From Mobula hypostoma (lineage: Eukaryota), in the NCBI RefSeq assembly GCF_963921235.1, contig NC_086123.1:4650001-4714000 (forward strand): a stretch of DNA of 64,000 bases. The letters are read 5' to 3'. A model generated the notes under the pieces. It was not told the origin of the DNA, did not search any database, and saw only the letters and a program-made list of their open reading frames with translations. A program made the translations under genes and the position numbers. Positions 8,153-60,135 of the stretch are shown here, piece after piece; within the stretch, counting starts at the first letter, position 1, and every line of letters begins with the position of its first letter.

Positions 8153-8252
8153 GATAGTCAGTGTTTTCAGTGGAAACTCAGCATTAAGACTGGTTACACA
8201 CAAAATGCTGGTGGAATGCAGCAGGCCAGGCAGCATTTATAGGAAGAAGTAC

Positions 8253-15980: not shown

Positions 15981-16171
15981 ATGGTAAATCTGGAAATGGA
16001 TCAAAACGCTACAACAGAAAACGAGACCCATCTTTTCCCAAGAATGAAAATGTTTCCAACCAGACCCGCCGCTCCTTTCCACAGAAAAGCAAAGCTTTTG
16101 ACAAGAGACCCCCTGCACGTGGTGCCAACAAATCCTTTAGCACTTCTGGTAATGGTGGTCGACGGGAGGAG
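15981..16171 (+). CDS. RNF10: RNF10 exon 2
   Basis: [23 protein letters not shown]...NGGRREE; ttttcag acceptor, GTGAGA donor. Confidence 0.96.
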
Positions 16172-16739
16172 GTGAGATTGAATGCTCTCACTTAAATTTC
16201 TTTAATAGTAATGATGCATGATGCAGTGCAGAGAGTAGTTATTGTTTCTGAGATTATTAGCAGAACAAAATTTTAACTGCCTTTTATGTTGGCATTTTAC
16301 CCTAATCCCAGAGTGCAGGATGCATTGGAGCACCTACTGCACTCGGACAGTGTTTCCCCTTAACAGGTGTATGGTTATCAATCTGTATAGGCTAATGGTT
16401 TTTAATTTTTATTCTGCTGTATGGAGGTGTTATCATTTATACTTGTGCTTGGGGTTTGTAAACATTTGATGCAGTATTCTTTAATTACATATTGTTCACT
16501 TGCACAGTTCTTAGATGAAGATTTGGGTGGACTCTTGTGAGCTGGCCCAGAGTGCCAAGTACACTCATCACCAGCATTGTCATTGTGTGTTCTGTGGCCC
16601 CCGTACACGACTGGTGAATTATACACAACACTTCAGGGTTCTTGCCCACTCCAGTTAATGGGTGCACAATACGTTAAAAAGTGGAGGGGAGAGAACAATT
16701 TATTGGAAATGAATGGACTTTCCCCCCTTCTATCTGCAG

Positions 16740-16948
16740 GTAGCAGAGGTGCGAAGGGCAGAGTTCAGCCCTGCCCAGTTTACTGGTCCCAAGAAGATAA
16801 GCCTAAACCACTTGTTAAATTTTACTTTTGAACCTCGTGGACAGTCGGGCTCACTATGTGATGGTGGTTCTTATGGACGCTGGGGTAAAAGAAACAAATG
16901 GAGACTGAAGCATAAGCCATTCAACAAGGAGCAGTTTCTCCAGGCCAA
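16740..16948 (+). CDS. RNF10: RNF10 exon 3
   Basis: [34 protein letters not shown]...[12 protein letters not shown]; canonical splice sites. Confidence 0.97.
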
Positions 16949-17754
16949 GTAAGTAGAGCAACATTAATTCGGTGACTTCTGTTTGTTCACTTTGATTTTA
17001 GTATTATTGTACAGATACCCGATTGATTAATTTTCATGTTATTTAGTCAAAATGTGAACATGGCTCTTTATTCTGAACAGTTTTAAATGCTGGAATTTGT
17101 TCCTCAGTTGTGCCAACAATTGAAAGCCATTTCTTATAGTTGGCACTAAAGTTATTAATTTAAATTTAGTATATTAAAGCTCCATATATTCATTGACTGA
17201 CATGGTACACTTTGAAGCAATAACATTTCATTTTCCCTACCGGCTTATTCTGACTGAAGGTAAGAAGCGTTGAATTTTTCTGATGTTTACAAAGGTGCCT
17301 ACCTTATTCTAAGGGGTACTGATAAGTAGAATTGGAAAGTATGCTTATTTTCTAACCATTTTGTGTGGCTAACTGTTATGGATTGGGATTGCCATAGTTC
17401 AGGTAGGAAGGAAGGTGTAAAATGCATTCAAGAGGATTTTCAGTATGTTGTGTGTCCCACTAGGATGTACTTTTCCCCCTGTCATCTTGGGAACAGATCA
17501 GTGGTCATAAAAAGAGTTGGTCCTCAAGTTAGGGCCCTTAAACTAGGGAAATGTGGATCTTGGTGTAAGACAGGATCTGGGAGTGTTGGATTGGGAGTAG
17601 ATGATGGAAGGGAAAATAAGTTGATAAGTGTGAGATAGTAGGGGTTCAGAGTCATTGTGAACCTTGGTTAATGAAGAATGTCACAGGTTTTATCTAAGGA
17701 AAAGAAGTTATGTAAGGTATAGGAAATAAGTCAGTTGAGGTTATAGGAGATAGA

Positions 17755-19279: not shown

Positions 19280-19281
19280 TA

Positions 19282-20960: not shown

Positions 20961-21214
20961 AATGAATGTTTGCTGGATATTTGTTAAGAGTTTTTTTTGG
21001 TAAGTATCTGGTGCAGAATTAATTAAGGCAAATTAGATGAATATCTGTACTGCTCAAATTATTGTTACTTGTATTTTTGATCTGATAGGGTGTTTGTATT
21101 TGGCACAGAAGACAGCAGGGACTAAAGAACAGTAAAAGGATTGCAAATGTTAAATATCTGTTCTAAAGTTTAATTTAAGTTTTGTTGGCTAACTGCCCAT
21201 CTTTTCTATTGAAG

Positions 21215-21305
21215 CTGTCAGTTTGTGGTTTCTGAAGAGCAGGACTACAGTATTCACTTAGCTGACCCAGATACGTTGGTGAACTGGGACTTTGTACAAC
21301 AGGTG
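21215..21305 (+). CDS. RNF10: RNF10 exon 4
   Basis: (N)[30 protein letters not shown]; GTAAGT donor. Confidence 0.97.
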
Positions 21306-21469
21306 GTAAGTATTTTTGTATCTGGGATGATAAAGATGATTTGTTCTGTTCATTCCTTGAAGGATTGCAAAACAAATATTGGATCTACCCCAGAAAACAT
21401 CTAATTTCAGTCAAAATCTTTTGAAACTTTAGGATGCTTTAGATATTTAGGATGTTTGTTTGAGATGTT

Positions 21470-23570
21470 TCCCTATAACGAGACCATCTAATGCCAGAAA
21501 GCAAAGGTTTTTGCAATCCACCTTATCTATGCTCTCATAAGTTTGTATTTTTTCTGTCCTGTTCACCCTTGGTTTCTTCTGCTGAAGGAAATAAAGCCAA
21601 TCTATCCAGTCTCCTTGTAACAACTGATAAATCTTTACTCTCTCCAGTGCAATTACATCCTTTGTAGTGACCAGCACTGTACACAGTACTATGTCTAGCT
21701 CCAGCTGTGGCCGAACCAAAGTTTAAAAAAAAAAAGTCGTACCATGATCAGGTGGAGACCAAGATCTCACCTCTCTATACTCAATGCCCCAGCTAATGAA
21801 AGTGAGTACCCACGTGCTGCCTTTATCACCCTATCTACCAGGGCGGATATGTACAGTGTTATTTGCACTTGTACACCAAGGTCCCCAGTGCTTCTTGGGG
21901 TTCTAAAATTCATGCCATATGCAAAAACCTTATTAGAGCTCCCTTCCCCAAATAAAAAGCATCAGCTCACACTTATTAGAATTAAATTCCGTTTGCTGTT
22001 GTCCCTCCCAATTTACAAACGTTTGTATTAATATCATTTCATAACCTCATACTCCCCTCTTCATGACGCAGAACATGATATTTCCTATATTCACATCCAA
22101 GTTATCAAACAGCAAGGATCCCGTGGTACATTGCTGGTCACAGGCTTACAATCACCTATCATCTCCCTCTGCCATCTACTAACAAGCCAATTTTGAACCC
22201 AGTTAGCCATTTTGCCTTGGCTCTAATGGATATGAATTAGCCTTCCACATGCAACCTTGTCAACAACCTCAATAAAGTCCCTGTAGAACTACCACACTGC
22301 TGTCTCCATTTTATTTAGGTATCTCTTTCAATAATTTAAAAAAAACACTAAATGAAATTACTGGCACAAGATATCTTAACAAATCCATGCTGATCAATCC
22401 TAGTTTTTCCAGGTGTAGCGCTTTTTTTTTTCTTTTGCTCCCTAGAATCTCTTAATTCTTTTTCCCAGTAATTTCCCTACCACTAACATTAGACTAAATG
22501 GCCTGTCGTTGCTTGGCTTATTCCAGATGCACTTCTGGGAACAAAAGTACACATTCGCTATCATTTGGCCTTTCAGCTGCTGGCCAGCAAAATACTTTTA
22601 TTTTATGGCTTTATAAGATGTATCTCAAGCAGCTATGGAAAGCAAGGAAGGGGAGTGTCGGGCTGGGCTACATCTCACAAGGCCTTGGGGATTTGTACAA
22701 TATTTTTGCCCAATAAGACATCTACTACGTCCTCTTCTCCAAATTTACTTGGATTTTCAGAAGGCCATTGACAAGGTGCCACACATGAAGCTGCTTAACA
22801 AGAGCCAGTGGTATTAACAAAAGATACTAGTATGGACAGAAGATTGGCTGACTGGTAAAAGGCAAAGTGTGGGAATAAAGGGGGCCTTTTCTGGTTGGAT
22901 GTTGGTGACTAGTGGTGTTCTTTTTATGTTGTATGTCAGTGATTTAGATGATGGAATTGATGGCTGTGTAGCCAAGTTTTTTAGATGATACGAACGTAGG
23001 TGGAGGAAGCAGGGAGTCTGCAGAAGGATTTGGACGGATTAGGAGAACGGGCAAAGAAGTGGCAGATGGAATACAGCGAGGGAAGTGTATTATTGTGCAC
23101 TTTGGTAGAAGGAGTAAAGCCATAGACTATTTTCTAAATGGAGAAAATTCAGAAATCAGCAGTGCAAAGGGACTTGGGAGTCCACGTGTAGGATTCCCTA
23201 AAGGTTAACTTGCAGGTTGAGTTGGGAATAGAATATAAAAGCAAGGATTTAATACTGAGACTTTGTTAGGCATTGGGCAGAGTGCACTTCAAGTATTGTG
23301 AGCAGATTTGGCCTCCTTATCTAAGAAGGAATACTCCAGAATTGTTGAGGATCCAGAGGAGGTTTACAAGAATGATCCCGGGAATGAAGTGTTTAACATA
23401 CGAGGTGTATTTGATGGTTTTGGGCCTGTACCCGCTGGAATTCAGAAGAATGAAGGGTAATCTCATTGAAATGCATCGAACATTGAAAGGCCTAGATAGG
23501 GTGGATGTGGAGGATGATTCCTATAGTGGATGAGGAAATGACCTCAGGATAGAAGGACGTCCCTTTAGGA
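21470..23570. mobile_element. CR1 LINE fragments (minus about 21470-22720, plus about 22735-23570)
   Basis: Minus MVRPQLE...KDVIALERV; plus YLDFQKAIDKVPH and YCEQIWPPYLRR...LEFRRMKGNLIE. Confidence 0.8.
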
Positions 23571-23871
23571 CTTTTAGTCCCTTCATGACTTTTGGGAGGG
23601 ATACAGGCTCTGGGAGGACTGAGTGGACCTGTTGCCATGCTTTTGGAGTATGGTTTAGTTGTATCTGTGTGCCTGTCCCTGGTGTGATAATGAAATAGTT
23701 TAGTATATATTCTGAGGTATTCAGTTGACTTTGTCTCAGTCTTTTAGGGATGAGGGAGGAGTTCCAGAGTTCCATTATTAATTACCTAGCTGAGTCCGGA
23801 GTACTTGATCAGTTTTGATCCTGTGCTCTGTAATGGTGTATTGGTTATTAATACAGACCTTTTACTTTCAG

Positions 23872-24056
23872 CGTATCTGTAGTCATGAAGTCCCCTCGTG
23901 CCCAATTTGTTTGTATCCGCCCTCTGCTGCAAAGATAACTCGCTGTGGACACATCTACTGTTGGGCATGCATTCTTCACTATCTGTCCTTGAGTGAGAAG
24001 ACCTGGGGCAAATGCCCTATCTGTTATGAAGCTGTCCATAAAAAGGATCTAAAGAG
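23872..24056 (+). CDS. RNF10: RNF10 exon 5 (C3HC4 RING domain)
   Basis: [61 protein letters not shown]. Confidence 0.99.
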
Positions 24057-24414
24057 GTGAGAGTTGGTTCTTTAATGATTATATATCTACTAGTAGAACA
24101 ACTACAGTACTACTTTAGGAAATGAATGAAGTCCTGTGCCACTGTTGTCAGTTGGTTACAATGATAAGAGAGAGACAGCAGGGATATGCATTTTACGTTT
24201 TGAATAATATTTAATGTTGAACTGGAATGTTTATAATCTCTTAGCTTCTTCGGCTATGGATACTGCTTTTTCCCCTTCCCCTTGCTGGAGGAAATGACAT
24301 GTTAAAATGCTATTTGGAAAAAATTTTAAGACCAGTTGTGAATATGCTTCATGGATATTGCATATATTAGAAAATTTTAGAAGTGCATGATACAGTTTTA
24401 AAAGGCTAATTGGA

Positions 24415-26403
24415 TCTGCTCCAATTTGCCTACCAGCATTACAGGTCCACAGCAGATGCCATCTCCATCGGCTCTTCACTCGACCCTGGGTAGTCTGGAC
24501 AGCAAAGATGCATACATCAGGATGCTTTTTATCAACTACAGCTCAGCATTCAGTACTATCACAGGCATCCCACCTCTCTCGGAAGTTCTTGGAGTCTCCC
24601 GCATATTGATGGAAGCTCCCTGACACCTGCAAATTATATACAATATCCCGGAAATTGATTTTTTTGAGAGCGAGAGCGAGAATCCTGATTGGTCTCTCTT
24701 TGTTCTCAGTCGACCTATCAGTTTTCTCTGTGGGCGGGCTTTACAGTCGACCTCTGTCTCTCCATCAGTTCAGTTTCGTGTCCTGCACCGCCATGGCAGA
24801 GTGTTTCAAAAAAATATATAAAACGTACTTCACCCCAGACTACACTAAAGTGTACCCCTGCCTGACAGGGGTCAAGAAATAATGACAGTGTTGCTCGCTG
24901 CACTGTTTGCAACAGTGACTTTTCTATTGCCCAGATGACTGTAAAAGACGATGTTGAGGTGAGTTTAACAGGTGTCATTCGTTCATTAGCATAGCTAACG
25001 TTATTTAAACTAGCTGGCTAGCTGCTAAGGAGCTACTCTATTAATGTCCTACGTGATGAGGCCAAACTCCCTGTAGTCTTGCTTAAAGTTGTAATAGAAT
25101 AAACATGATAATATGGTTACATATTTTAATGTCACATTTTCTGCATATACCCAACTTGGTTTACAGATTAGACGTAATCACTAAGCAAAGTATTACATAC
25201 ACCCTTGGAGGCCGAGCGGGGGGAGGGGTGGGGGGGGGTGGTGCTACCTCCCTGAAATGAGTTCTTGCAGGGCGGGATGTCTGCTATCATCCCCTCAAAA
25301 CTAATCAATAGCCTTCAAGAGCTTGGCTTCAATACCTCCTTGTGCAATTGAATTCTCAATTTCCTCACTTACAGACCCCAGTTAGTTCAGATTGGCAACA
25401 TCATCTCCTTCACAATCTCCTTCAGTGCAGGAGCACGACAAGGCTTTGTGCTTAGACCCCTGCTCTACTCGCGTTGCACGAATGATTGTGTGGCTAAGCA
25501 CAGCTCCAATGCCATATTTAAGTTTGCGGCCGACACCACTTGTAGGCTGAATCAAAGCTGGTGGTAAATCAGAGGGGGGCTTAGTGATACCACAACAACA
25601 CTCTCACTGGTATGTCAGCAAGACCAGGGAGCTGATTATTAACCCTGGCAGGAGGAAACCAGAGGTCCAAAAGCCAGTCCTCATCAGGGGATCAGAGGTG
25701 AAGAGGCTCAGCAACTCTAAACTCATCAGTGTTACTTGTCCTTGGCTCAGCATCTACGTGCAATTTTGAAGGAAACACAGCAGCACCTCTACTTAGACGT
25801 TTGCAGAGATTTGGCATGACATCTAAAACTTTGACAGACTGGTGTGGTGGAGAGTATATTGACTGACTGTATTACAGCCCGGTATGGAAACACCAATGCC
25901 CTTGAATAGAAAGTGCTTAATTTTTTTTTTAAAAAAGGGTATGGCCCAGTCCATCACCCGTAAAGATCTCCCCAACACTGAGCATATCTACACGGATCTG
26001 TGTCGCAGGAAAACACCATCCATCATTAGGGACCCCCTACCACCCAGATCATGCTGTCTTCTCACTATGGCCATCAGGAACCTCGGGACTTGCACAGAAT
26101 TTCAGGAACAGTCATTGCCCCTCGGCCATCAGGCTCTTGAGCCAAAGGGGGTAATTTCACCTGCCCCATGTCTGATCTGTGACCACAACCTATGGACTCA
26201 CTTTCAAGGCCTCTTAATCATGTGTTCCTGATAATTACTGTTTTGTTTTTTTGTGTTTTCAGTTTGTTGTCTTTTGCACTGTTGGGTGCAGTCATTCATG
26301 GCTATTGTGGTTATTGTATTTATTGGGTACGTCCGCAAGAAAATGAATCTCAGGGTTGTATATGGTGATGTATATGCTTTGATAATAAATTACTTTGAAC
26401 TTT
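24415..26403 (+). mobile_element. Rex1/Babar LINE 3' portion, interrupted by a hAT element
   Basis: LHSTLGSLDSKDAYIRMLFINYSSAFSTI|IPSKL; KFAADT; 3' tail aataaattactttgaacttt. Confidence 0.85.
24562..25283 (+). mobile_element. Non-autonomous hAT-like DNA element with apparent 6-bp TSD and a residual BED-finger-like exon
   Basis: TIRs CAGGCATCCCACC / GGCGGGATGTCTG; CTATCA on both flanks; internal YKTYFTPDYTKVYPCL..NDSVARCTVCNSDFSIA followed by a GTGAGT donor. Confidence 0.8.
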
Positions 26404-26717
26404 AATTGTATGCTTGGGATACAGAAGTCTAACATGCAGTATACTTTGGAAGAGAGACCCAGGTCATTGCTGAAGGTTACAATGTTTTAAGATGTCAAAG
26501 GGTTTACGGGAGAAAGTGGGCCGCCCTCAGTCCAATCTTGAGTTGAAGAGATTGCACTGAATCTCTGACTTCTGGTTTGACTTGTGTTGTAGTGAATAGT
26601 GCAATACTAAGCTGATGAAGCATTCCCCACTCACTCACCCTCTTTCTCCTTCTCCAAATGAGATGGAATGGACTGTAGGCTCTACTTAAGGTTAATGATG
26701 CAGCTTTGGAAAAAGTA

Positions 26718-27225
26718 CAGTAGCCACTTTATTAGGTACACCTGTGTGCCTACTCATTAACACACATCTCTCATCAGCCATCATGTGGTAGTAACTCAAT
26801 GCATAAAAGCATGCAGACATGGGCAAGAGGTTCAGTTGTTCAGCGCATTCATTTGTATAGACCAAACATCTGAATGGGTAAGTGACTTCATTGACTGTGG
26901 AATGATTGGTGCTAGACAGGGTGGTCTTGGGTATCTTAGAAATCTTGATCTCCTGGTATTTTCAAACACAACGGTCTCTAAAATTTACAGAGAATGGTTC
27001 AAAAAAACAAAGCATCCAGTGTGTGGCAGTTCTGTGGGTGAAAACATTAATAAGTGAGGGCAGAGGGGTATGGCCAGGAAGGTGACAGTAATTCAACTGA
27101 CAAAGCTTAGCAACAGGTGGTGTGCAGAAGAGCAGTTCTGAATGCACACATTGAACCTCAAAATGGATGGGCTACAGGAACAAATGACCACACCAGGTAC
27201 AGACCACACAAGTGGCCACTGAGTG
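26718..27225 (+). mobile_element. Tc1-derived non-autonomous element
   Basis: CAGTAGCCACTTTATTAGGTACACC ... AAGTGGCCACTGAGTG|TA; internal GMIGARQGG..FSNTTVSKIYREW (Tc1 HTH remnant). Confidence 0.8.
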
Positions 27226-28433
27226 TACATTTGTGTAAGCTTTCATGTATGTAACTCTTAAGTTGACTTTTTTTAATAAGATTTTTGTTACTATTCCTCC
27301 TAAAGCCTAGGAAGATGTGGTCAAATCACAGCTGCTGAGAAATATGACACTTGATACAAAGCAGCCAGAATTGAGAAGAAATTATTCACTTGTTATATCT
27401 GATCTTAAAGCTGCTGATGTGTGCACAGCTATAAAAATACTGTTTAAATACTGGGGCATTGAAACTCTCCAATCTCTGAACTTTGGATTTTTTTTTCTGT
27501 CTGTAGCAAAGGACCATATTTTCAGGTAGTATTGTTTAAATGGAGATGAAGTTTAATTGGAATAGTAATTTTGAAGGTATTCCTATGCAACAGCATTCTG
27601 TGTCAAGAAAAAAAAAGCATAGGTTTGATATGAACTCTACTAGATTAATAGTGACTGTCATTTAAAGAGTTCATTTAAATCTTGCTGTTGTTTGGTCAGG
27701 TTCTGTAGGAGAACTCTATTGGCTTGACACAGTCTAATAGCCATTAAAATTGCAAGAGACTGGGACGTAGAAATTTAGTGTGTACTTCAGTGAGGGAACA
27801 CTGATTACATTTGAAGTGTATTTATCCTGGGTTTTTTGGCAGCCTTCAGTTTTTTTAATAATAACAATTTGTAACACAATTTTAGCATGTGTTAGAACAA
27901 GTAACTGCCTTTAGCATTTCTCTGCCTTGTTCTGCAGGATAGGAATTCTCTTTAACCTCTGATATTTTAGTTCACAGATCAGTCATTAGAGTAACGTACA
28001 CACTGCTGGAGAAATTCAGCAGATCAGGCAGCATCAGTGGAAAGGAATAAACAGTTCATGTTTCAGGTCGAGACTTTCGTCAGGACTCTATGGTAATCCC
28101 AAATCAGATGACAAGTCACCAGCTGATTTGGGTAGCCTGATTTCAGTTAGTGCTGTTTATAATCATTCATCAGTGTTTGGTATTGCTATGGCACGTGAAA
28201 GAATGGTATGTGCCTTCTTTTCTATTCCTTTACACCCACAGAGCTGAAATTGGTATGTTCATTGAGTGGCTGTACTCCTCTTGTGCCACCTTTTCTCATT
28301 TTATTTCTGATCTAGCTCTGTTTGCTGGTGTAACAGGGGTAAAGGTGTAAAGATTTAATTATTTTGGACAGTGTATTATGCATTGTAACCCTTAGTGATT
28401 CATATCGAGTTAATGTGTGTTGCTTTGTTTCAG

Positions 28434-28567
28434 TGTGATTGCCATGGAGACTCACCAGTATAATGTGGATGATATGATAACCATGCAGTTGATGCGCAGG
28501 GAGAAAGGCACTCTGATGGCTTTACCCAAATCTCTGTGGATGAAACCCGAATCATTTCATTTGGGAG
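28434..28567 (+). CDS. RNF10: RNF10 exon 6
   Basis: (S)[44 protein letters not shown]. Confidence 0.96.
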
Positions 28568-29269
28568 GTTAGTGGAAACATTATTATTTCAGGTCCATGC
28601 TGGAAATGTAGGGCAAAATGCATTTAAAATTCTGGCTGGTTGAAGAAGTATCGTAGGGTTCAGGTTCAGCTGTCCCAAACTAGTATTGATCTAGAACTGC
28701 AGAAACTAAATTATCAAAGCATTAGCTGACAGTAATTATATTTGCATCAAAGTGCTCTAATTGTTGCATAAAGATTAGATAAAATGGGTAGAATTAAATG
28801 TGAACACATTATTTGAAAGTTATTTGTCTGTAAAAATAATTCGAAATCTCTTAAAAGAATAATTTAGGCTTCATATTAGATATAGTATCTGGAACTCAGT
28901 CAATTGTATGCTGTTGGCCAAATATTGATGGCCAATTTGGGGAATCTGTATTTGAAAACACAATATTTGAATTCTATTTCAAAGTACTTTATAAGGCCTT
29001 TTTCTATAAGAGGAAATTCTTAAATTGCATGTAGACAGGTTTGTTTGGGGACAGATGTATTTCACTAATATATATCTACAGGTTTAAATTTGCAGATGAC
29101 CTATAGTGGAATTAAATTTATCTACATTTTTTGCTGATAATTAGAAACCAGAAGGGGACTGGGACTGCTTGCTCCATTTCTAGTGTCATGTGATATTACT
29201 GTACGAGGTAGCTTGGTATTTTTGCATTGCCATTTGCTCTACTGATAAAGTAGTACAGTTTTCATTGAA

Positions 29270-29730
29270 AAATTGCAGAACAGGTTTAACATGATGTTGC
29301 TAGGGTTAGGGGGCCTGAATTACAGGGAGAAATTGGCCATACTAGATTTTTACTGCTTGCATCAAGATAATGAAGGACAAACTTGTGGACATGTTTAAAA
29401 TTCTGAGAGAAATAGATAAGATGGATGGTAACGGTCTTTTCCCAGGGTAAGGGAGGCAAAACTACAGGGCATAGGTTTAATGTGAGAGGGGAAACATTCA
29501 AAAGGAACTTGAGGGGCAACTTTTTTTTTACACCGAGTGCAGTGAGGATATGAAGTGAGCTGCCAGAATTATTTGAGGCAGGTACAATAGTATCGTTTTT
29601 TTGGATAGAGACGTGGAGGAGTAGGGCTTCATAAGGATATGGGCTGAACACAGGAAATTGGAGCCTGCTGGGTGGACAGTGGTCAACATGGACTCACGGG
29701 ACTGCAGGGCCTACATCCATGCTGTATGAC
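29270..29730 (+). mobile_element. CR1 3' fragment
   Basis: KTTGHRFNVRGETFKRNLRGNFF; CR1-like tail. Confidence 0.75.
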
Positions 29731-30230
29731 AATATGGATCTAATTGCCACCAAAATGCAATGGGACTATTTTGCTCCAGTAAATCTTGCTAAATACTTGG
29801 CAATTTTGCCCAGTTTCTGTATGATTCGCATTCTTGTGTGACTAGAATGAATAGATTGAAATAAAATGCTACTTCACCACTGTGACCCTTACTGATGAAC
29901 TGCTATCAGTAAGTAGGCTGCTGACCTGGAATTGGATTGGCTCCCTGGTCTCCCCATGCCACTACTTGTGATTAAGGCTGAAATACTAAAGGATGTTGAT
30001 GAATTGCTACCTACTCAATAATGTGATATGTAAAAATCCCGTTCATAGTTCCTAAAGATTTTCAAATTAAGTAAGCTCTCATCATAAGATGAATAAAATT
30101 AATTCATTCTTTATCAACCCATAGTAGTTCATTGAACTTCGAACTTTTTTTGCAGTAATTCGATTGATTTTTATTCTCAACTGAATCTGCTTTTTTATGT
30201 ATTCTTCCTTCCCTGTAAACACTGTAGTAG

Positions 30231-35054: not shown

Positions 35055-38000
35055 GCCAGAACTGAAAGATGATGCAGTCTAATACGTGGCTAAGGAGTTG
35101 GTGTAGAGGGAGGGCATAAGGTTTTTGAATCATTGGTCTCTCTTCCAGGGAAGGTGGCACCTGTGCAGAAGGGATGGTTTGCACATGAACTGGAGAGGGA
35201 CTAATATCCTAATGGGAAGGTTTGTCAATGCTGCACGGTGGGGTTCAGTCTAGAGTTGCAGGGGAATGGGAACCAGAGCGCCAGAGCAGTTGGTAGAGAG
35301 GCTATGGAGGCAGATGTTGGTAAGATGTCTGACAAAGTTAGGAATCAAAAGCCTGAGCATGGTGCAACTGGTATCCTGAGCTGCCTATATTTCAATGCAA
35401 GAAGTATGGTAGGAAAGGCAGATGATAGTGCTGAAGATGAGGTAGCTGGTTTATAAACAAAGGCAATGTAGTGAGGAGAGGCTGTTGATAGAACAAAATT
35501 GCAGTCAACGGGATGAGTTCCAATGTAAAAGATGGACAAAATTGATAAAAGAACTGAAGGTGTTATATTTGAATGTGCACAGTATATGGAATAAAGTAGA
35601 TGAACTTGTAGCACAGTTACAGATTGATGTTGTAGGCACCGCTGAATCATGGCTGGAAGAAGGTTATAGTGAAGAGTCCAAGAATACACTTTGTATTGAA
35701 TGGACAGGTAGGAAGGTAGAGGGGGCGGCATTGCTGTGATGGTAAAAAGTGAAATAAAATCATTAGAAAGAGGTGACATAGGGTCAGAAGATATTAACTC
35801 ATTGTGGATAGAGCTAAGGAACTACAAGGGTAAAAAGACTCTGATAGGAGTTGTATACAGGTCTCAGAATAGTAGTAAGTATGTGGTCTACGAATTACAA
35901 TGGGAGATAGAAAATGTATGCCAAAAGGGCAATGTTGCAATAGTCATGGGGATTTCAATTTGCATGTACATTGGGACAATCAGGTTGGTACTGGATTCCA
36001 GGAGGGAGAATTTCTAGAATGACTAGATAATGGCTTTTTAGAGCAGCTCGTGATTGTGCCCACAAGGGGATCAGCTATTTGGCATTGGATGTTGTGCAAT
36101 GAATCAGAATTGATGAGCGAGCCCTTGGGGGCAAGTGATTGAATTCACCCTGAAATTTGAGAAGGACAAGTTAAATTCAGATGTACCAGTGTTACAGTGG
36201 AGTAAAGGGAATTAGAGGCATGAGAGGAGTTGGCCAAAATTGATTGGAAAGGAACACTGGTAGGGATGTCAGCAGAGTAACAGTGGCTGGAATTTCTGAA
36301 AGCAATTCGGAAGGCACAGGTTATACACATCCCAAAGAGGAACAAGTATTCTAAAGGAAACAAGACACAACTGTGGCTAACAAGAGAGTCAAAGCCAAAG
36401 AGAGGGCATATAATAGGATTCAGAAATTTTTAAAAGACAACAGAAGGCAATTAGAAATGTCATTAAAAAGGTAAATGTGGAATACAAACAAACTATTAGA
36501 GGATACCAAAAGTTTCTTCAGATACGTAAGTGTAAAAGAGGCAAGATTGTTTTCTAGCAGTTCAATATCCAATGCTGGACATGTAGAAATGGATAAGGAA
36601 ATGGTGGACGAACTGAATAAGAATTTTGCATCAGTCATCACTGTGGAAGACACTAGCAGTATGGTGGAAATTCTAAGTGTCAGGGGTCATGAAGTGTGTG
36701 AAGTTACCATTATTAGAGAGAGGGTTCTTGGAAAACTGAAAGGTCTGAAGGTAGATAAGTCACCTGGATCAGATGATATACAATTCAAGTTACTGAAAGA
36801 GATGGCTGGAGAGATTGTGGAGGTATTAGTAATGATCTTTCAAGAATCACTAGATTCTGGAATGGTTCTCGAAGACTGGAAAATTGCAAATGTCATTTTA
36901 CTCTTCAAAAGGGAGAGGAACAGAATAATGTAAACTATAGGCCAGTTAATCTGACCTCAGTTGTTGGGAATCATTGGAGTTGATAAATAAGGGTGAGTTC
37001 TCAGGGTTCTTGGGGGCGCATGATAAAATAGGCTGTAATCAGCATGGTTTCCTCAATGGAAAATCTTGCCTGACAAACCTGTTGGACTTCTTTGAAGAAA
37101 TAGCAAGTAGGATAGACAAAGGAGAATTGTTTGATCTTGCATACTTGGATTTTAAGAAGCCTTTTGACAAAATGCCACACGTGAGGCTGTTGAACAGGCT
37201 ACAATACCATGGTATTACATGAAAGATTCCAGCATAGATAAAGCATTGTCTGATAGGCAAAGTGGCAAAGAGTGGGAATAAAAGGAGCCTTTTCTGGTTG
37301 GCTGTCGGTGACTAGTGGTGTTCTGCAGGGGTTTGTTGGGATCGTGTTTTTTTTTAAATGTTATATGCCAATGATTTGGATGAGGGAATAGATGGCTTTG
37401 TTGCAAAGTTTGCAGATGATATGAAGATGGGTGGTTGGGCAGGTAGTTTTGTGGAAGCAGTCTACAGAAGGGCTTGGATAGATTAGGAGAATGGGCAAAG
37501 AAATAGATGGGATACAGTGTCGGGAAGTGTATGGTCATGCACTTTGGTCGAAGAAATGGAAGGATTGACTGTTTTCTAAATGGAGAGAAAATTCAAAAAA
37601 CTAGGATGCAAAGGGACTTGGAAGGCTTTAGGATTCCCTAAAGGTTAATTTGTAGGTTGAGTCTATGGAGAGGAAGGTAAATGCAATGTTAGCATTAATT
37701 TGAAGAAGGCTAGAATATAAAAGCAAGGATGTAATGCTGACACTTTATAAAGCACTGGTGAGGCCTCACTTGGAGTATTGTGAGCAGGTTTGGGGCCTTT
37801 AGAAAGGACGTGCTGAAACTAGAAGCTTCAAAGGAAGTTCAGGAAAATGATTCCAGGATTGTCATATGAAGAGCATTTGGCTCTGAGCCTGTATTCACTA
37901 GAGTTCAGAAGAATGAGGGGTGACCTAATTGAAACGTATTAGATGGTGAAAGGCCTTGATAGAATGGATATGGAGGGGATGTTTCCTGTGGTGGGAGAGT

Positions 38001-40160: not shown

Positions 40161-40248
40161 GTTTGTTTCTGCAGTTTGTATCAGTGACTTGAATTGTGTG
40201 TCTTACATTTAGTGCCTTGATAATTTTAACTTTATCATTCTTTGACAG

Positions 40249-40350
40249 TTGACTTGGACAGAAGGAGATGTCTTCGCCTGAAAAAAGCTCGGGATGAACG
40301 TCGAAGGGAACGTAGGATTGAAATGGAAGAAAATGAAAAGCAAGGCAAAT
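40249..40350 (+). CDS. RNF10: RNF10 exon 12
   Basis: VDLDRRRCLRLKKARDERRRERRIEMEENEKQGK. Confidence 0.96.
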
Positions 40351-40422: not shown

Positions 40423-40590
40423 ATCCAGAAATACATATTGGACTGGAAAACTACCAGCAATTCCCAGCTTTTGGCTCTACAGAGAGTGCACAATTTATCC
40501 CTTCCTTTACTTGCCCTGACGATGATCCTCTGCCTAGAGTCAGTCTTTCAGCCAGCACAACCCTAAGCAGCAGTCCAAATTCTTTGCCAG
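40423..40590 (+). CDS. RNF10: RNF10 exon 13
   Basis: YPEIHIGLENYQQFPAFGS...LSSSPNSLP. Confidence 0.95.
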
Positions 40591-41465
40591 GTATGAAAAT
40601 CTATATTGAAAAAAAATTCTTTATAAACTTTCACTTGTTTAAAATGTATCATCTCAAACTGCACTACATGAGTGATGTTAGATGATAAAAATGGTCCCTA
40701 TAAAGGTTGCTCCTGGATTATGAACAGGTTCTTTTTTACAACTGTTCAAAAGTTGATTTTTGTCAATGAGGCATAAAATATACAAATTTCAATCACTCGT
40801 GTGCGTTGACACTACTATGTTTCACAGTTGCCTGATTTAGTTAGTTTTACCTGAAAGTCTCTTCCAGGAGAACCAGAACTCCTGTGAATTCAGATATGCA
40901 CCAATATTCTATTGGCTTGCAAATCAAGTAGCCTTTTTGTTTCCCCTCTACACCATAGTCTGGTAAATGTTATGTTGAATTTGATAGCCATAATGAGAGT
41001 AATTGAATCACATGGAGATGCTTGCATGTAATTATGGTTTAAACTTTTGAGGAAGATCTCAAAAGCTTTCGAATCTGAAATTTAAAAGTTTCAACACCAA
41101 GTCTGGATTCTTTAAGCAATATACTTCATTGTTTTTGTACTTGGAGTTATCTTTAGTGTTCTGGTAACAAGCATTGAGTAGTTAATGTTTTGTTACTCTC
41201 TCTAATGGTCATTGTAGATTCTGAAACTTTACTAATATTGGGGTATTCTTCCAAATTTGATATTGTCCTTAACTGAGTTTTTGTCTCTCTTAATCCTTAT
41301 CAGAGCTGGGAATGGGCTAGAGAAAGGGTTGAAATGTCTAATGTCAGACAGGATAAATTTAAAATGAGAGGGGGTGATTTCAAAGATAAAGGGCAAATTT
41401 TTTTTACAGTGAGGTGCGTGCTTGAAATGTGCTGCCTGAGGCAGAAACATTGGGGACTTTTAAGA

Positions 41466-41815
41466 AACACACAAAATGCTGGAGGAACTCAGCAGGCTGG
41501 GCAGCATCAATAGAAAAGAGTACAGTTGACATTTTGGGCTGAGACCATTCAGCAGGACTGGAGGGAAAAAGGTGTGGAGTAGAGTTAAAGTGGGGGGGGG
41601 GAGGAGAGAGAGACAGAAAAACACAAGGTGATAGGTGAAACTGGGAGAGGGATGAAGTAAAGAGCTGGGAAATTGATTGATGGAAGAGATACAAGGCTAG
41701 AAAAGGGGGAATCTATCAGGAAAGGACAAAGGCCATGGAAGAGAAGGAGGAGGGAGGCGATGGGCAGGGAGATGAGATGAGAGGGGGAAAAGGGGATGGG
41801 GAATGATGAAGGATA
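41466..41815 (-). mobile_element. Penelope-like 3' UTR and terminal repeat (hammerhead degenerate)
   Basis: Similar to 8196-8590; core reads CTGCTGA...CAAAATGTC, so it is mutated. Confidence 0.8.
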
Positions 41816-42589: not shown

Positions 42590-43105
42590 GGAATCTATAA
42601 CAAAACAATGCTGCAAGATCTCTTGGGTTGGGCAGCGTTTGTGGAGACAACGTAGGTAGATGTTCCACGACGAGGCCCGGAATCAGGAATGAGAGAATAC
42701 GAAAGGTTGCCAGTACATAGGGAAGGTGAAGGATGGGTGGAATGTAGTGGGAGTGGAGAGTGACTTAATGCTGGTAGATAATAGGTGAAGCCAGATGGGG
42801 AGCAGATGTTGGGCACATGGAACCAACAGGGGAGAGTCTGGGGTGGGACAGAGGCTGATGGGTGGGATCAGAGATAAAGATAAATGCATCTGTCCCATTC
42901 CATCACCAGTTACATCTTCCTCCTCTCTACCCCACTGCCCCTCCCTGGAACCACAGGGACAACTTTCCTGCCTCACTTCCATTCAGGGACCTAACCAGCT
43001 CTTTCAGGTGAGGCAGACATTCAGTTGTGCATCTTCCAAGCTGGTCTACTGAATTTGAAGTTCACAATGTGGCCTCTAGATGACCATCTCACAGAGCACC
43101 TACAG
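42590..43105. mobile_element. Older Penelope-like remnants (minus-strand terminus, plus-strand GIY-YIG N-terminal region)
   Basis: TSIQGPNQLFQVRQTFSCASSKLVY*I*SSQCGL. Confidence 0.65.
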
Positions 43106-43241: not shown

Positions 43242-43342
43242 AATCAACATTGAACCCATCAGCTCCTGTGTTTAGTCCAGGGAGTCCTTCTCTGTGTGTT
43301 GGTAGCATGGAGGAGGATGTACACTTCCCTTCATTTGCTCAG
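43242..43342 (+). CDS. RNF10: RNF10 exon 14 (contains a PAM2-like motif)
   Basis: ESTLNPSAPVFSPGSPSLCVGSMEEDVHFPSFAQ; phase 1/0 fits the neighbouring exons. Confidence 0.96.
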
Positions 43343-53639: not shown

Positions 53640-53861
53640 CTAAAATGAAGAAAAATAATTAGTGCCTGTCTGAAAGGCCCAAAAATACATTAGCTTAAAC
53701 CTTTGTATCATCATCCATTTGTTCCAAAAGTATGATAAAATCTTACAGCCTAGTCTTGTATGTTTCCACCTAAAGATATTCCTGTACTGGAGTACAGGTT
53801 TCCCTAACGTGCCCAGGGCAGTACAATTGAGTCTAGAAGCACAAAAACTGAATCCAGGTAG

Positions 53862-54929
53862 TGCTCTGCTGGGGGAGAAGCTGACAGTGATGCAGGTGGA
53901 TGCTCTCCTGGTGTCATGGATTATTGATTACCTGACTGGCAGACCACAGTACGTGTGCTTGCAACACTGTGTGTCTGACAGAGTGATCAGCAGCACTGGG
54001 GCTCCACAGGGGACTGTCTTGTCTCCCTTTCTCTTCACCATTTACACCTCAGACTTCAACTACTGCACAGAGTCTTGTCATCTTCAGAAGTTTTCTGATG
54101 ACTCTGCCATAGTTGGATGCATCAGCAAGGGAGATGAGGCTGAGTACAGAGCTACGGTAGGAAACTTTGTCACATGGTGTGAGCAGAATTATCTGCAGCT
54201 TAATGTGACTAAGGAGCTGGTGGTAGACCTGAGGAGAGCTAAGGTACCGGTGACTCCTGTTTCCATCCAGGGGGTCAGTGTGGACATGGTGGAGAATTAC
54301 AAATACCTAGGGATACGAATTGACAATAAACTGGACTGGTCAAAGAACACTGAGGCTGTCTACAAGAAGGGACAGAGCCGTCTCTATTTCCTGAGGAGAC
54401 TGAGATCCTTTAACATCTGCCAGACGATGCTGAGGATGTTCTACGAGTCTGTGGTGGCCAGTGCGATCATGTTTGCTGTTGTGTGCTGGGGCAGCAGGCT
54501 GAGGGTAGCAGACACCAACAGAATAAACAAACTCATTCGTAAGGTCAGTGATGTGGGGATGGAACTGGACTCTCTGACGGTGGTGTCTGAAAAGAGGATG
54601 CTGTCCAAGTTGCATGCCATCTTGGACAATGTCTCCCAGAATGTACTGGTTGGGCACAGGAGTACATTCAGCCAGAGACTCATTCCACCTAGATACAACA
54701 CGGAGCGTCATAGGAAGTCATTCCTGCCTGTGGCCATCAAACTTTACAACTCCTCCCTTGGAGGGTCAGACACCCTGAGCCAATAGGCTGGTCCTGGACT
54801 TATTTCCTGGCATAATTTACATATTACTATTTAACTCTTTATGGTTTTATTATTATTTAATTATTTATGGTGCAACTGTAACGAAAACCAATTTCCCCCA
54901 GGATCAATAAAGTATGACTATGACTATGA
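53862..54929 (+). mobile_element. Young 5'-truncated Rex1/Babar LINE with an uninterrupted RT C-terminal ORF
   Basis: GAPQGTVLSPFLFTIYT, KFSDDS, YKYLG, LYFLRRL; open to 54786; tail AATAAAG(TATGAC)n. Confidence 0.95.
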
Positions 54930-57112: not shown

Positions 57113-57660
57113 AACACAGAACATAGAATAGTACAGCACAGTACAGGCTCTTCGGCCCACAATGTTGTGCTGACCCTTAAGCCCTGCCTCCCATATAACC
57201 CCCCCACCTTAAATTCCTCCATATACCTGTCTAGTAGTCTCTTAAACTTCACTAGTGTATCTCCTCCACCACTGACTCAGGCAGTGCATTCCACGCACCA
57301 ACCACTCTCTGAGTAAAAAACCTTCCTCTAATATCCCCCTTGAACTTCCCACCCCTTACCTTAAAGCCATGTCCTCTTGTATTGAGCAGTGGTGCCCTGG
57401 GGAAGAGGCGCTGGCTATCCACTCTGTCTATTCCTCTTATTATCTTGTACACCTCTATCATGTCTCCCCTTAACCTCCTCCTCTCCAAAGAGTAAAGCCC
57501 TAGCTCCCTTAATCTCTGATCATAATGCATACTGGTAAATCTCCACTGTACCCTTTCCAATGCTTCCACATCCTTCCTATAGTGAGGCGACCAGAACTGG
57601 ACACAGTACTCCAAGTGTGGCCTAACCAGAGTTTTATATAGCTGCATCATTACCTCACAA
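57113..57660 (-). mobile_element. Young CR1 3' fragment
   Basis: [24 protein letters not shown]...FFTQRVVGAWNALP. Confidence 0.92.
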
Positions 57661-57662
57661 CT

Positions 57663-57760
57663 CCCTGATGAAGGGTCTCGACCCAAAACGTCAACTGTAC
57701 CTCTTCCTAGAGATGCTGCCTGGCCTGCTGCGTTCACCAGTGATTTTTATGTGTGTTGCT
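57663..57760 (+). mobile_element. Penelope terminal-repeat fragment with a mutated hammerhead core
   Basis: CTGATGA-AGGGTCTCGACCC-AAAA-CGTC (GAAA mutated to AAAA). Confidence 0.8.
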
Positions 57761-60135
57761 GCCTGTAGCCTATTTTATCATGTCCCTCCAAGTACCCCGA
57801 GACCTCGTCCTTAATAATTGACTCCAGCATCTTCCCAACCACTGAGGTCATACTAGCTGGCCCATAGTTTTCTTGCTTCTGCATCTCTTCCTCTTGAAGA
57901 GTGGAATAAATTTTGCAGTTTTTCAGTCTTCCAGAACCATTCTAGAATCTAGTGATTCTTGAAAGATCATTACTAATGCCTCCACAATCTCCTCAGCCAC
58001 CTCTTTCAGAACCCTGGGGTGTACACCAACTGGTCCAGATGACTTAACTACCTTCAGACCTTTCAGTTTCCCCAAGAATCTTTTCTCTAGTAATGGTAAC
58101 TTCACACACTTCATGAACCCTGACACCTAGAACTTCACCATACTGCTAGTGTCTTCTAATAAAGAAGACTGATGCAGAATACTTATTTAGTTCATGTGCC
58201 ATTTTCTCATCCCCCATTACTACCTCTCCAACATCATTTTCCAGCAGTTCGATATCCACTCTCTCCTCTCTTTTGCACTTTATGTATCTGAAGAAACTTT
58301 TGGTATCCTCTTTCATGTTATTGGCTAGCTTACCTTCATAGTCTATCGTAATAACTTTTTTAGTTGCCTCTGTTGATTTTTAAAAGCTTCCTAATCCTCC
58401 AACTTCCCACTAATTTTTGCTCAATTATATGCCCTCTTTTTGGCTTTTATGTTGGCTTTGACTTCAATCGTTAGCCACTGTTGTGCCACCTTTCCTTTAG
58501 AATATTTCCTCCTCTTTGAGATGTATATATCCTGTGCCTTCCGAATTGTTTCCAGAAATTCCAGCCATTGCTGCTCTGCCGTCATCCCTGCCAGAGTTCT
58601 TTTCCAATCAGTTCTGGCCAACTCCTCTCTCATGCCTCTGTAATTCCCTTTACTCCACTGTAATACTGATACATCAGACTTTAGATTCTCCTCATATTTC
58701 AGGGTGAATTCGATCATATGATCACTTACCCCTAAGGGTTCTTTTACGTTAAGTTCTCTCATCAGTTCTGATTCATTGCACAACACTCAGAATAGCTGAT
58801 CCCCTAGTGGGCTTAACCATGAGCTGCTCTAAAAAGCCATCTTGTAGGCATTCTAGAAATTCTCCCTCCCGGAATCCAGCACCAACCGATTTTCCCAACC
58901 TATCCACATAATGAAATCCCCCATGACCATTGTAACATTGCCCTTTTGGCATGCATTTTCCATCTCCCATTGTAATTTGTAGACCGCATCCTTACTACTG
59001 TATACAAGGGTCTTTTCACCCTTGCAGTTCCTTAGTTCTATCCACAATGACTCAACACCTTCCAAACCTGTCACCTCTTTCTAATGATTTGATTTCACTT
59101 TTTAACCAATAGTGCAACGCCACCCCCTCAGCCTTCCTGCCTGTCCTTTCGATCCTTGGACACTAAGCTCCCAGCTAAAATCTTCTTTCAGCCATAATTC
59201 AGCAATGCCTACAACATCATACATGCCAATCTGCAACTGTGCTGCATATTTTTTCTACCTTATTCTGTATACTGCGTACATTCAAATATAACACATTCAG
59301 TCCCATACAGTATTCACCCTTTTCGATTTTGTCTGGGTTTTAGAAACATAGAAAATAGGTGCAGGAGTAGGCCATTCGGCCCTTCGAGCCTGCACCGCCA
59401 TTTATTATGATCATGGCTGATCATCCAACTCAGAACCCCGCCCCAGCCTTCCCTCCATACCCCCTGATCCCCGTAGCCACAAGGGCCATATCTAATTCCC
59501 TCTTAAACATAGCCAATGAACTGGCCTCAACAGTTTCCTGTGGCAGAGAATTCCACAGATTCACCACTCTCTGTGTGAAGAAGTTTTTCCTAATCTCTGT
59601 CCTAAAAGGCTTCCCCTCTATCCTCAAACTGTGACCCCTCGTTCTGGACTTCCCCAACATCGGGAACAATCTTCCTGCATCTAGCCTGTCCAATCCCTTT
59701 AGGATCTTATACGTTTCAATCAGATCCCCCCTCAATCTTCTAAATTCCAACGAGTACAAGCCCAGTTCATCCAGTCTTTCTTCATATGCAAGTCCTGCCA
59801 TCCCAGGAATCAATCTGGTGAACCTTCTTTGTACTCCCTCTATGGCAAAGATGTCTTTCCTCAGATTAGGGGATCAAAACTGCACACAATACTCCAGGTG
59901 TGGTCTCACCAAGGCCTTGTACAACTGCAGTAGTACCTCCCTGCTCCTGTACTCGAATCCTCTCGCTTTTAAGTTGCAACACATCCTGTTGACTGCAATT
60001 TTGCCCTATCAATAGCCTCTCCTCACTACACATTGCCTCTGTTTGTAATCCAGCTACGTCATCTTCAGTACTATCATCTACAATACTTCTTGCATTGAAA
60101 TACAGTATACACAGCTCAGGACACTAGTCGCATTG
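57761..60135 (-). mobile_element. CR1-type LINE (APE to start of RT), same family as 35055-38200, interrupted at 59341-59966
   Basis: ESLWIELRNCKG, VMGDF, PLGVSDH, LKGLKVVKSSGP on the minus strand. Confidence 0.9.
59341..59966 (-). mobile_element. Young CR1 3' fragment nested in an older CR1
   Basis: Open ORF MIPGMAGLAYEERLDELGLYSLEFRRLRGDLIE...; tail ctatgtttcta on the minus strand. Confidence 0.92.

What the first reader, a model, noticed from the sequence alone, without database searches (positions are those of the whole stretch)
43244..43279. Near-canonical PAM2 (PABP MLLE-binding) motif in RNF10 exon 14
Seen: exon 14 encodes STLNPSAPVFSP inside a Ser/Pro-rich, probably disordered region. 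Established: PAM2 has the consensus xxLNxxAxxFxP, with L, A and F as the key contacts (Ataxin-2 STLNPNAKEF, USP10 STLNPQAPEF, eRF3 LNVNAKPF). RNF10 ubiquitylates 40S protein uS3 on stalled ribosomes, and USP10 is the opposing deubiquitylase. As I recall, human RNF10 reads LTPLSPTASQGSP at this position and lacks the Phe. Inference: RNF10 in this lineage may be tethered to poly(A)-binding protein like its antagonist, an ancestral link that mammals may have lost. The flanking SP sites (FSP, GSP) fit the phospho-regulation described for PAM2 motifs. I do not know of a described PAM2 in RNF10.
Basis: partly seen in the sequence, partly recalled or inferred. Interest (0 to 1): 0.82.

Follow-up and report, generated by a model that had tools for sequence, protein, structure and literature searches.

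The report
Ancient PABP-docking motif in RNF10
The ribosome-quality-control ubiquitin ligase RNF10 of this cartilaginous fish carries a textbook PAM2 peptide, the short motif that docks proteins onto poly(A)-binding protein; the motif is shared with acorn worm, amphioxus and coelacanth RNF10 but absent from every tetrapod and ray-finned fish sampled, humans included.

Summary
Window 43244-43279 (+) encodes STLNPSAPVFSP at the start of RNF10 coding exon 14 (43242-43342). Transcript contigs from four runs show the predicted splice junctions.

The spliced peptide passes Pfam PAM2 (21.7 bits, cut-off 20). It lies in a region modelled as coil.

The motif alone is not significant. The regex hits about once per 30,000 codons, and the whole-genome E-value is 4. 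The comparative evidence carries the case:
- The same motif sits in the orthologous exon, with the same intron phase, in a hemichordate, three amphioxus species, rays, squalomorph sharks, a chimaera and the coelacanth.
- Across nine such sequences the only invariant residues between two flanking anchors are L-N-P-x-A-x-x-F-x-P-G.

The motif is degraded in galeomorph sharks and in Callorhinchus. It is absent from bichirs, sturgeons, a teleost, lungfish, all tetrapods sampled, echinoderms and the few protostomes sampled.

Binding to the PABP MLLE domain is inferred. A complex prediction gave weak support only (0.42 against 0.01 for the best control).

No paper in the library mentions RNF10 together with PAM2 or MLLE.

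Verdict: a probable new, lineage-restricted member of the PAM2 motif class, ancestral in deuterostomes. It is moderately interesting. The scan has noted this same stretch once before (s1-142171).

The parts
43244..43279 (+). PAM2-class motif STLNPSAPVFSP (Leu3, Asn4, Pro5, Ala7, Phe10, Pro12), followed by Gly
   Evidence: Translation. Pfam PF07145 scores 21.7 bits on the spliced 30-mer and 19.2 on the exon alone. These are exactly the invariant columns of alignment A1.
43242..43342 (+). RNF10 coding exon 14. A phase-1 start completes a Glu codon; the exon ends after ...FPSFAQ
   Evidence: AG/GT boundaries. Transcript contigs join 40590>43242 and continue from 43342 into MLKDG. tblastn with P0226. 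The same exon limits and phase are found in amphioxus L022 and hemichordate L023.
43325..43342 (+). Start of the FPSFAQML block, invariant in all motif-bearing orthologues and kept in most RNF10 sequences; it serves as the downstream anchor
   Evidence: Alignment A1. Alignments and region prints. AF2 puts a short helix here.
40423..40590 (+). RNF10 coding exon 13: YPEIHIGLENYQQFPAF, then a Ser/Pro-rich linker ending ...SSSPNSLP. Its last base G starts the Glu codon before the motif
   Evidence: Sequence. RNA joints 40350>40423 and 40590>43242.
40246..40350 (+). RNF10 coding exon 12 (basic stretch KKARDERRRERRIEMEENEKQGK)
23872..24056 (+). RING finger exon of RNF10
   Evidence: Pfam zf-C3HC4 at 38.9 bits, E 7.7e-10.
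16740..16949 (+). Conserved N-terminal RNF10 exon, used to find the orthologues
   Evidence: phmmer against 1.84 billion representatives. The hits carry RNF10 names in NCBI and UniRef.

Best explanation
The stretch is a genuine, selectively maintained PAM2 short linear motif in the disordered C-terminal part of the RING E3 ligase RNF10. It most likely works as other PAM2 motifs do. The peptide would wrap around the MLLE domain of cytoplasmic poly(A)-binding proteins, with Leu3 and Phe10 in the two hydrophobic pockets. Binding would be of micromolar affinity and competitive with the other PAM2 proteins (eRF3, PAIP1/2, ATXN2, TOB, USP10). This would concentrate RNF10 on polyadenylated mRNPs, next to the 40S subunits whose uS3 and uS5 it ubiquitylates, at the same dock that its opposing deubiquitylase USP10 uses. 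The motif was present in the deuterostome ancestor as part of one exon module (PAM2 ... FPSFAQ). It was later lost several times: in echinoderms, in ray-finned fishes, in lungfish plus tetrapods, and in Callorhinchus. It has decayed partly in galeomorph sharks. Shown here: the sequence, its expression, the motif-class match, disorder of the region, exon orthology, and residue-specific conservation. Inferred: the binding itself, the partner, and the consequence for 40S ubiquitylation.
For: Sequence and expression. Motif class: Pfam PAM2 gives 21.7 bits (cut-off 20) on the spliced peptide; Heptranchias scores 20.3, Glandiceps 20.0, and four others 13-18. Genome context: the own-genome PAM2 scan returns 14 matches. 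Those I can name from memory of human PAM2 sequences are PAIP2-, eRF3-, two ATXN2-, TOB-, USP10- and PAIP1-like, and the RNF10 exon is among the 14 (USP10 identity also has an Atlas lead at 0.88). Conservation: in A1 (ray, two squalomorph sharks, a chimaera, coelacanth, three amphioxus, one hemichordate) the invariant columns between the LE..FP and FPSFA.ML anchors are exactly L N P. A.. F. P G, and the flanks are not conserved. Homology: in amphioxus and hemichordate the motif opens an exon with a phase-1 split codon one residue before [ST]xLNP, and that exon ends ...PSFA[QE]|gt, as in this window. Specificity: among 203 full-length RNF10 sequences the regex occurs only at this site. Accessibility: AF2 on A1 gives coil through residues 1-88, pTM 0.17. 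Binding: complex prediction with an MLLE domain (P0283:186-285, 45/45 identical to the own-genome PABPC1-like exon L002) gave weak support. The score was 0.42, best of 3 controls 0.01. That mark was reached by 51 of 78 solved complexes and 2 of 108 mismatched pairs, but at 0.60 or under by only 5 of those 78 and by all 4 mismatches that passed (of 180). The runs agree in at least 83% of contacts and the partner's pLDDT is at least 54. Biology: RNF10 ubiquitylates uS3/uS5 and USP10 reverses it (PMC10878831). USP10's PAM2 binds the PABPC1 C-terminal (MLLE) domain at 26.7 uM (bioRxiv 10.64898/2026.01.10.698208). The RING E3 MKRN1 interacts with PABPC1, is listed among MLLE-binding PAM2 proteins, and is linked to quality control of poly(A) translation (PMC10878831; PMC9753129; PMC6805484, title and abstract only).
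Against: No binding measurement exists. The complex score is in the weak band, and MLLE-PAM2 complexes are solved, so the model may be scoring from memory. The Pfam score is marginal: 19.2 on the exon alone, 19.9 in the genome scan with E 4. The motif is dispensable in most vertebrates. Within sharks the galeomorphs carry Pro5>Gln and Ala7>Thr/Val, which argues for weak or lineage-dependent constraint. Tunicates, cyclostomes and cnidarians were not sampled. Only a handful of protostomes and one teleost were.
Confidence: 0.6

Rival explanations
1. The motif is conserved and functional, but its partner is not PABP. It could bind the MLLE domain of the HECT ligase UBR5/EDD (an E3-E3 link), or serve as an unrelated docking or phospho-dependent site within the larger module that ends in FPSFAQML.
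For: The own genome encodes a UBR5-like MLLE (L005). EDD is stated to be the only other MLLE protein (PMC9753129). The motif always travels with the invariant FPSFAQML block in one exon. SP sites lie inside and next to it.
Against: The invariant residues are exactly the PAM2 contact positions and nothing else. PABPC MLLE exons are present in several copies in this genome. All well-studied PAM2 proteins bind PABPC. A UBR5 link would come in addition to PABP binding rather than instead of it.
Confidence: 0.15
2. In this species the motif is an evolutionary relic or a chance look-alike. The ancestral sequence drifts slowly in a slowly evolving lineage and no longer has a function, as in the many lineages that lost it without obvious cost.
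For: The regex is common in random translation. The genome-wide E-value is 4. The motif was lost repeatedly in actinopterygians, tetrapods, lungfish, echinoderms and Callorhinchus, and decayed in galeomorphs. Chondrichthyans and the coelacanth evolve slowly (general knowledge).
Against: The flanks within the same disordered exon have diverged beyond alignment between hemichordate, amphioxus and gnathostomes, yet seven motif positions are invariant. Once constraint goes, the motif decays fast: Callorhinchus has three hits in 12 residues against a chimaera RNF10 that is 89% identical overall. The strict pattern arises in at most 4.5e-5 of shuffles.
Confidence: 0.2

Closest known systems
USP10 PAM2 motif (the deubiquitylase opposing RNF10)
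   Same: The core is nearly identical. USP10 of the same genome reads STLNPQAPEFILG (L015/L021); RNF10 reads STLNPSAPVFSPG. Both sit in disordered regions of enzymes that act on ubiquitin marks on uS3/uS5 of the 40S subunit. USP10's PAM2 is a measured PABPC1 MLLE-domain binder, Kd 26.7 uM.
   Different: USP10 keeps its motif in mammals, whereas RNF10 has lost it there. RNF10 has Val at position 9 where most PAM2 motifs have Glu or Pro, and it keeps the canonical Pro12, which USP10 lacks (Leu). RNF10 binding is unmeasured.
MKRN1, a RING E3 with a PAM2 motif acting in ribosome-associated quality control
   Same: It is a RING ubiquitin ligase that interacts with PABPC1, is listed among MLLE-binding PAM2 proteins, and is linked to surveillance of translating ribosomes (PMC10878831; PMC9753129; PMC6805484, title and abstract only). 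It is the closest functional precedent.
   Different: MKRN1 belongs to an unrelated family (C3H zinc fingers, RNA-binding). Its reported ribosomal target is eS10 and its context is poly(A) stalls, not uS3/uS5. Its PABPC1 interaction is experimentally validated.
Canonical PAM2 proteins (PAIP2, eRF3, ATXN2, TOB; Pfam PF07145, ELM LIG_PAM2_1)
   Same: They share the xxLNPxAxxFxP consensus in a disordered segment. The same-genome examples are SKSTLNPDAKEFVPG, SKLNVNAKPFVPN and KSTLNPNAKEFNP.
   Different: RNF10 lacks the Lys-Glu at positions 8-9 typical of the strongest binders, and it scores at the bottom of the genome's PAM2 list. A low affinity is therefore plausible.

Membership tests
PAM2 motif (Pfam PF07145 / ELM LIG_PAM2_1) | Sequence consensus xxLNxxAxxFxP reaching the curated profile threshold | tested here: met
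   The spliced 30-mer scores 21.7 bits against a cut-off of 20, E 1.4e-4. The exon alone scores 19.2. The margin is small.
PAM2 motif (Pfam PF07145 / ELM LIG_PAM2_1) | Lies in an accessible, intrinsically disordered region | tested here: met
   AF2 on alignment A1 (orthologous ray segment) gives no secondary structure through residues 1-88, mean pLDDT 60.6, pTM 0.17. The flanks are Ser/Pro-rich.
PAM2 motif (Pfam PF07145 / ELM LIG_PAM2_1) | Key contact residues (Leu3, Ala7, Phe10, Pro12) conserved among orthologues while the flanks drift | tested here: met
   L, N, P, A, F, P and G are the only invariant columns between the two anchors in nine sequences spanning hemichordate to coelacanth. This holds only in part of the tree: the motif is degraded in galeomorph sharks and Callorhinchus and absent in actinopterygians, lungfish, tetrapods and echinoderms.
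PAM2 motif (Pfam PF07145 / ELM LIG_PAM2_1) | Physical, Phe-dependent binding to an MLLE domain | not testable with these tools
   There is only a prediction, with weak support: 0.42 against a best control of 0.01. The mark was reached by 51 of 78 solved complexes and 2 of 108 mismatches, but at 0.60 or under by 5 of 78 and by all 4 passing mismatches of 180. Runs agree in at least 83% of contacts and the partner's pLDDT is at least 54.
PAM2 motif (Pfam PF07145 / ELM LIG_PAM2_1) | Host protein acts in cytoplasmic mRNA or translation biology, and an MLLE partner is present in the organism | tested here: met
   RNF10 ubiquitylates 40S proteins (PMC10878831). The own genome has at least four PABPC-type MLLE exons and a UBR5-type one.
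RNF10 / Mag2 E3 ligase family | RING finger plus the family-specific N-terminal and C-terminal blocks, and orthology to named RNF10 proteins | tested here: met
   RING exon: Pfam 38.9 bits. The N-terminal exon finds proteins named RNF10 in NCBI and UniRef. tblastn of ray RNF10 maps 14 or more collinear exons on the + strand.

The most novel reading that the evidence does not exclude
RNF10 was originally a PABP-docked ligase. In the deuterostome ancestor, the E3 that marks 40S subunits (uS3/uS5) and the deubiquitylase USP10 that erases the mark both used a PAM2 peptide to compete for the same MLLE site on poly(A)-bound PABP, which would couple 40S turnover to the poly(A) tail. Cartilaginous fishes, the coelacanth, amphioxus and acorn worms still have this arrangement. 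Tetrapods and ray-finned fishes rewired it by dropping the E3's dock while keeping the DUB's.
Probability: 0.45. Interest if true: 0.65.

Novelty: new member of a known kind. Interest (0 to 1): 0.55.

Why it matters
A PABP dock in non-tetrapod RNF10 would give a concrete, testable recruitment route. It would also place the ligase and its antagonist USP10 on the same platform. It offers a natural experiment too: the same enzyme exists with the dock (ray, squalomorph shark, coelacanth, amphioxus) and without it (human, teleost). That allows swap experiments on whether PABP tethering changes the rate or selectivity of 40S ubiquitylation. It also adds a clean example of a short linear motif kept in three deep deuterostome lineages, at fixed exon position and phase, and then lost repeatedly. 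No paper in the 8.4-million-paper library mentions RNF10 together with PAM2 or MLLE.

Tried and rejected
1. Pfam on the exon translation alone falls just short: 19.2 bits against a cut-off of 20. The threshold is passed only when the spliced upstream residues are added.

2. The motif match taken alone is rejected as evidence. The regex hits five times in the window's six frames, and the genome-wide HMM E-value is 4.

3. A region-restricted homologue search with the amphioxus C-terminus was swamped by low-complexity words (poly-Ala, poly-Lys). It returned only 8 proteins. It did add two more Branchiostoma species but no wider invertebrate sampling, so tunicates, cyclostomes and cnidarians remain unsampled.

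4. A complete MLLE domain could not be taken from the own genome, because the domain is split over exons. A database fragment, P0283, whose core is identical to the own-genome exon, was used instead.

5. Convergent origin of the motif in hemichordate, amphioxus and vertebrates was rejected, because exon limits and phase coincide.

6. A second PAM2 elsewhere in RNF10 that might compensate in mammals was looked for. There is none in 203 full-length sequences by the regex.

7. A words search of the scan's earlier notes for USP10, PAM2, PABP and MLLE found nothing.

8. Phospho-regulation of the FSP and GSP sites is plausible from the literature on PAM2 flanks (Huang et al. 2013, cited in PMC9753129), but these tools cannot test it.

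Full report
**What is there.** Window 43244-43279 on the + strand translates to STLNPSAPVFSP. The stretch opens a 101-base exon, 43242-43342, with an AG acceptor and a GT donor. The first two bases of the exon complete a Glu codon begun by the last base of the previous exon (40423-40590).

The + strand of the window carries RNF10:
- a RING exon at 23872-24056 (Pfam zf-C3HC4, 38.9 bits);
- the family's N-terminal block at 16740-16949, which in a search of 1.84 billion representatives finds proteins that NCBI and UniRef call RNF10;
- fourteen or more collinear tblastn blocks with ray RNF10, in which this exon is the 14th.

The closest available RNF10 is that of the electric ray Narcine, about 75% identical over the tblastn matches. 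Sharks and chimaera come next, so the organism is a cartilaginous fish.

**Expression.** Contigs of four runs of one study (depth in the hundreds on exons, about 5 on introns) join 40350>40423 and 40590>43242 at GT..AG. They continue from 43342 into ATGCTGAAGGATGGG. The mature message therefore encodes ...SSSPNSLP-E-STLNPSAPVFSPGSPSLCVGSMEEDVHFPSFAQ-MLKDGKAKA.

**Is it more than chance?** The match taken alone is not.
- The ELM-type regex (from memory) hits five times in the six-frame translation of the window.
- The exon alone scores 19.2 bits against Pfam PAM2, just under the cut-off of 20.
- In a six-frame scan of the whole 3.48-Gb genome the exon scores 19.9 bits with E 4.

With the spliced upstream residues the score is 21.7 bits. 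The genome scan returns only 14 matches. The others that I can name from memory of human PAM2 sequences are PAIP2-, eRF3-, two ATXN2-, TOB-, USP10- and PAIP1-like peptides. The USP10 assignment is also backed by an Atlas lead at 0.88. The exon therefore keeps company with the genome's real PAM2 repertoire, at the bottom of the list.

**Comparative evidence.** This is what decides the case. The canonical motif is present in:

| Lineage | Sequence |
|---|---|
| Narcine (ray) | STLNPSALVFSPG |
| Pristiophorus, Heptranchias (squalomorph sharks) | STLNPSAPAF[SN]PG |
| An unnamed holocephalan transcript, 89% identical to Callorhinchus RNF10 | SSLNPSASVFTPG |
| Latimeria (coelacanth) | SMLNPLAAVFTPG |
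| Three Branchiostoma species (amphioxus) | SNLNPAAVEFVPG |
| Glandiceps (hemichordate) | TALNPNAREFTPG |

In an alignment of nine such sequences, two anchors flank the motif: LE..FP upstream and FPSFA.ML downstream. The only invariant columns between the anchors are L, N, P, A, F, P and G. These are the PAM2 consensus positions, including the Leu, Ala and Phe contacts, plus the following Gly. The rest of the linker is not conserved.

In amphioxus and in the hemichordate the motif opens an exon with a phase-1 split codon one residue before [ST]xLNP, and that exon ends ...PSFA[QE]|gt, exactly as in this window. The motifs are therefore homologous, not convergent.

Composition-matched shuffles give the regex in 0.1-0.65% of 100-residue regions and the strict LNPxAxxFxP in at most 0.0045%. 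Among 203 full-length RNF10 sequences the regex never occurs anywhere else in the protein.

**Where it is degraded or missing.**
- All eight galeomorph sharks sampled (Scyliorhinus x2, Cetorhinus, Carcharodon, Mustelus, Chiloscyllium x2, Hemiscyllium, Rhincodon, Stegostoma) keep L, N, F and P. They have Gln at position 5, and Ala7 is A, T or V. The two galeomorph sequences scanned (Scyliorhinus torazame, Chiloscyllium punctatum) gave no Pfam match.
- Callorhinchus reads SSPSPSPSVFTPG.
- Bichirs, sturgeons and paddlefish keep only V.FP.LG.
- The teleost Larimichthys, read from genomic DNA, has no trace.
- Lungfish, amphibians, sauropsids and mammals lack it.
- Four echinoderm classes, a nemertean, a bivalve-type sequence and a centipede lack it.

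The simplest history is presence in the deuterostome ancestor followed by at least four losses and one partial decay. Tunicates, cyclostomes and cnidarians were not sampled.

**Context of the motif.** AF2 on the aligned segment gives coil up to the short helix at SFAKMLK (pTM 0.17), which fits a short linear motif in a disordered region. The own genome has PABPC-type MLLE exons at four or more loci and a UBR5-type MLLE.

**Binding.** This could not be measured. A complex prediction paired exon 14 (33 residues) with a complete MLLE domain: P0283 residues 186-285, whose core is identical at 45 of 45 residues to the own-genome PABPC1-like exon. The verdict was weak support:
- score 0.42, best of 3 controls 0.01;
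- the mark was reached by 51 of 78 solved complexes and 2 of 108 mismatched pairs, but at 0.60 or under by only 5 of those 78 and by all 4 mismatches that passed (of 180);
- the runs agree in at least 83% of contacts, and the partner's pLDDT is at least 54.

Because MLLE-PAM2 complexes are solved, this shows likeness to a known interface, not that this copy binds.

**Mechanism proposed.** RNF10 is the RING ligase for uS3 and uS5 on 40S subunits of compromised ribosomes, and USP10 removes those marks (PMC10878831). USP10's PAM2 binds the PABPC1 C-terminal domain at 26.7 uM (bioRxiv 10.64898/2026.01.10.698208). In this genome that motif reads STLNPQAPEFILG, and the RNF10 motif shares eight of the ten residues in STLNPQAPEF. 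The RING ligase MKRN1 is a precedent for a PABPC1-interacting E3 in ribosome surveillance.

I infer that the RNF10 motif docks the ligase on PABP-coated poly(A) tails. This would raise its local concentration on translated, polyadenylated mRNPs, in competition with USP10 and the other PAM2 proteins for the same MLLE site. The affinity is probably modest, because the Lys-Glu of strong binders is replaced by Pro-Val. The repeated losses show that the dock is not essential for RNF10's core function.

**Rivals.** The partner could be UBR5, or the motif could have some other role within the PAM2...FPSFAQML module (0.15). Alternatively it could be a functionless relic in a slowly evolving lineage (0.2). 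Against the relic reading, the flanks in the same exon have diverged beyond recognition, and the motif decays fast once constraint goes, as in Callorhinchus.

**Novelty.** No paper in the searched library holds RNF10 together with PAM2 or MLLE. The 22 papers that hold RNF10 and PABPC1 are reviews or gene lists, judging by their titles and abstracts. This is a new, lineage-restricted member of a well-known motif class. It is not a new kind of system.

Noticed in passing
window 43325-43342 and the next exon; A1 columns for FPSFA.ML: The block FPSFAQML(R/K)xGKAK directly downstream of the motif is invariant in all nine motif-bearing orthologues and kept in most RNF10 sequences from centipede to human, including lineages that lost the PAM2. 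AF2 makes it the only helix of the segment. I know of no described function for it.
   Followed up: partly
L022:~6678-6800 and L023:~9108-9270: The exon that starts with the PAM2 motif and ends with ...PSFA[QE] has the same limits and the same phase-1 start in amphioxus, an acorn worm and this cartilaginous fish. It is an old, stable exon module.
   Followed up: yes
window 41377-41600 (intron 13): An intronic repeat is covered by transcript contigs with word depth of 11,000-30,000, against a few hundred to about 1,300 on RNF10 exons. Its translation (…SPAEWSQPKMSTVLFSIDAAQPAEF…) resembles recurring open frames elsewhere in the window (4347-4632, 8184-8838, 42595-42816). It is probably the abundant SINE-like element that other first-stage notes link to hammerhead motifs.
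   Followed up: no
G000:C78:21592829-21592876 (-), locus L011: An ATXN2-type PAM2 exon (RKSTLNPNAKEFNP) lies on the same contig as RNF10, about 16.9 Mb away. This recalls the shared 12q24 location of the two human genes (from memory).
   Followed up: no
L003:1273-1833 (G000:C2:166176419-166176574): An MLLE-type exon copy ([45 protein letters not shown]) sits in a 187-residue open frame whose flanks do not look like PABP. It may be a diverged paralogue exon or a pseudogene piece.
   Followed up: no
P0147 versus P0225 (L008): Callorhinchus milii RNF10 has three substitutions inside the 12-residue motif (L>P, N>S, A>P) relative to another holocephalan whose RNF10 is 89% identical overall. This looks like a recent, local loss.
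   Followed up: partly
L014 (G000:C45:102895256-102895597, -): One 346-residue open frame holds two PAM2 matches (SSFNPEAQVFTP and SSLSPNAKEFVYPG), as in TOB-family proteins. This served as a positive control for the genome scan.
   Followed up: no
window 35485-37222, 53719-54786, 57252-59074: Several long open frames in RNF10 introns and downstream look like LINE reverse-transcriptase and endonuclease fragments, on both strands.
   Followed up: no
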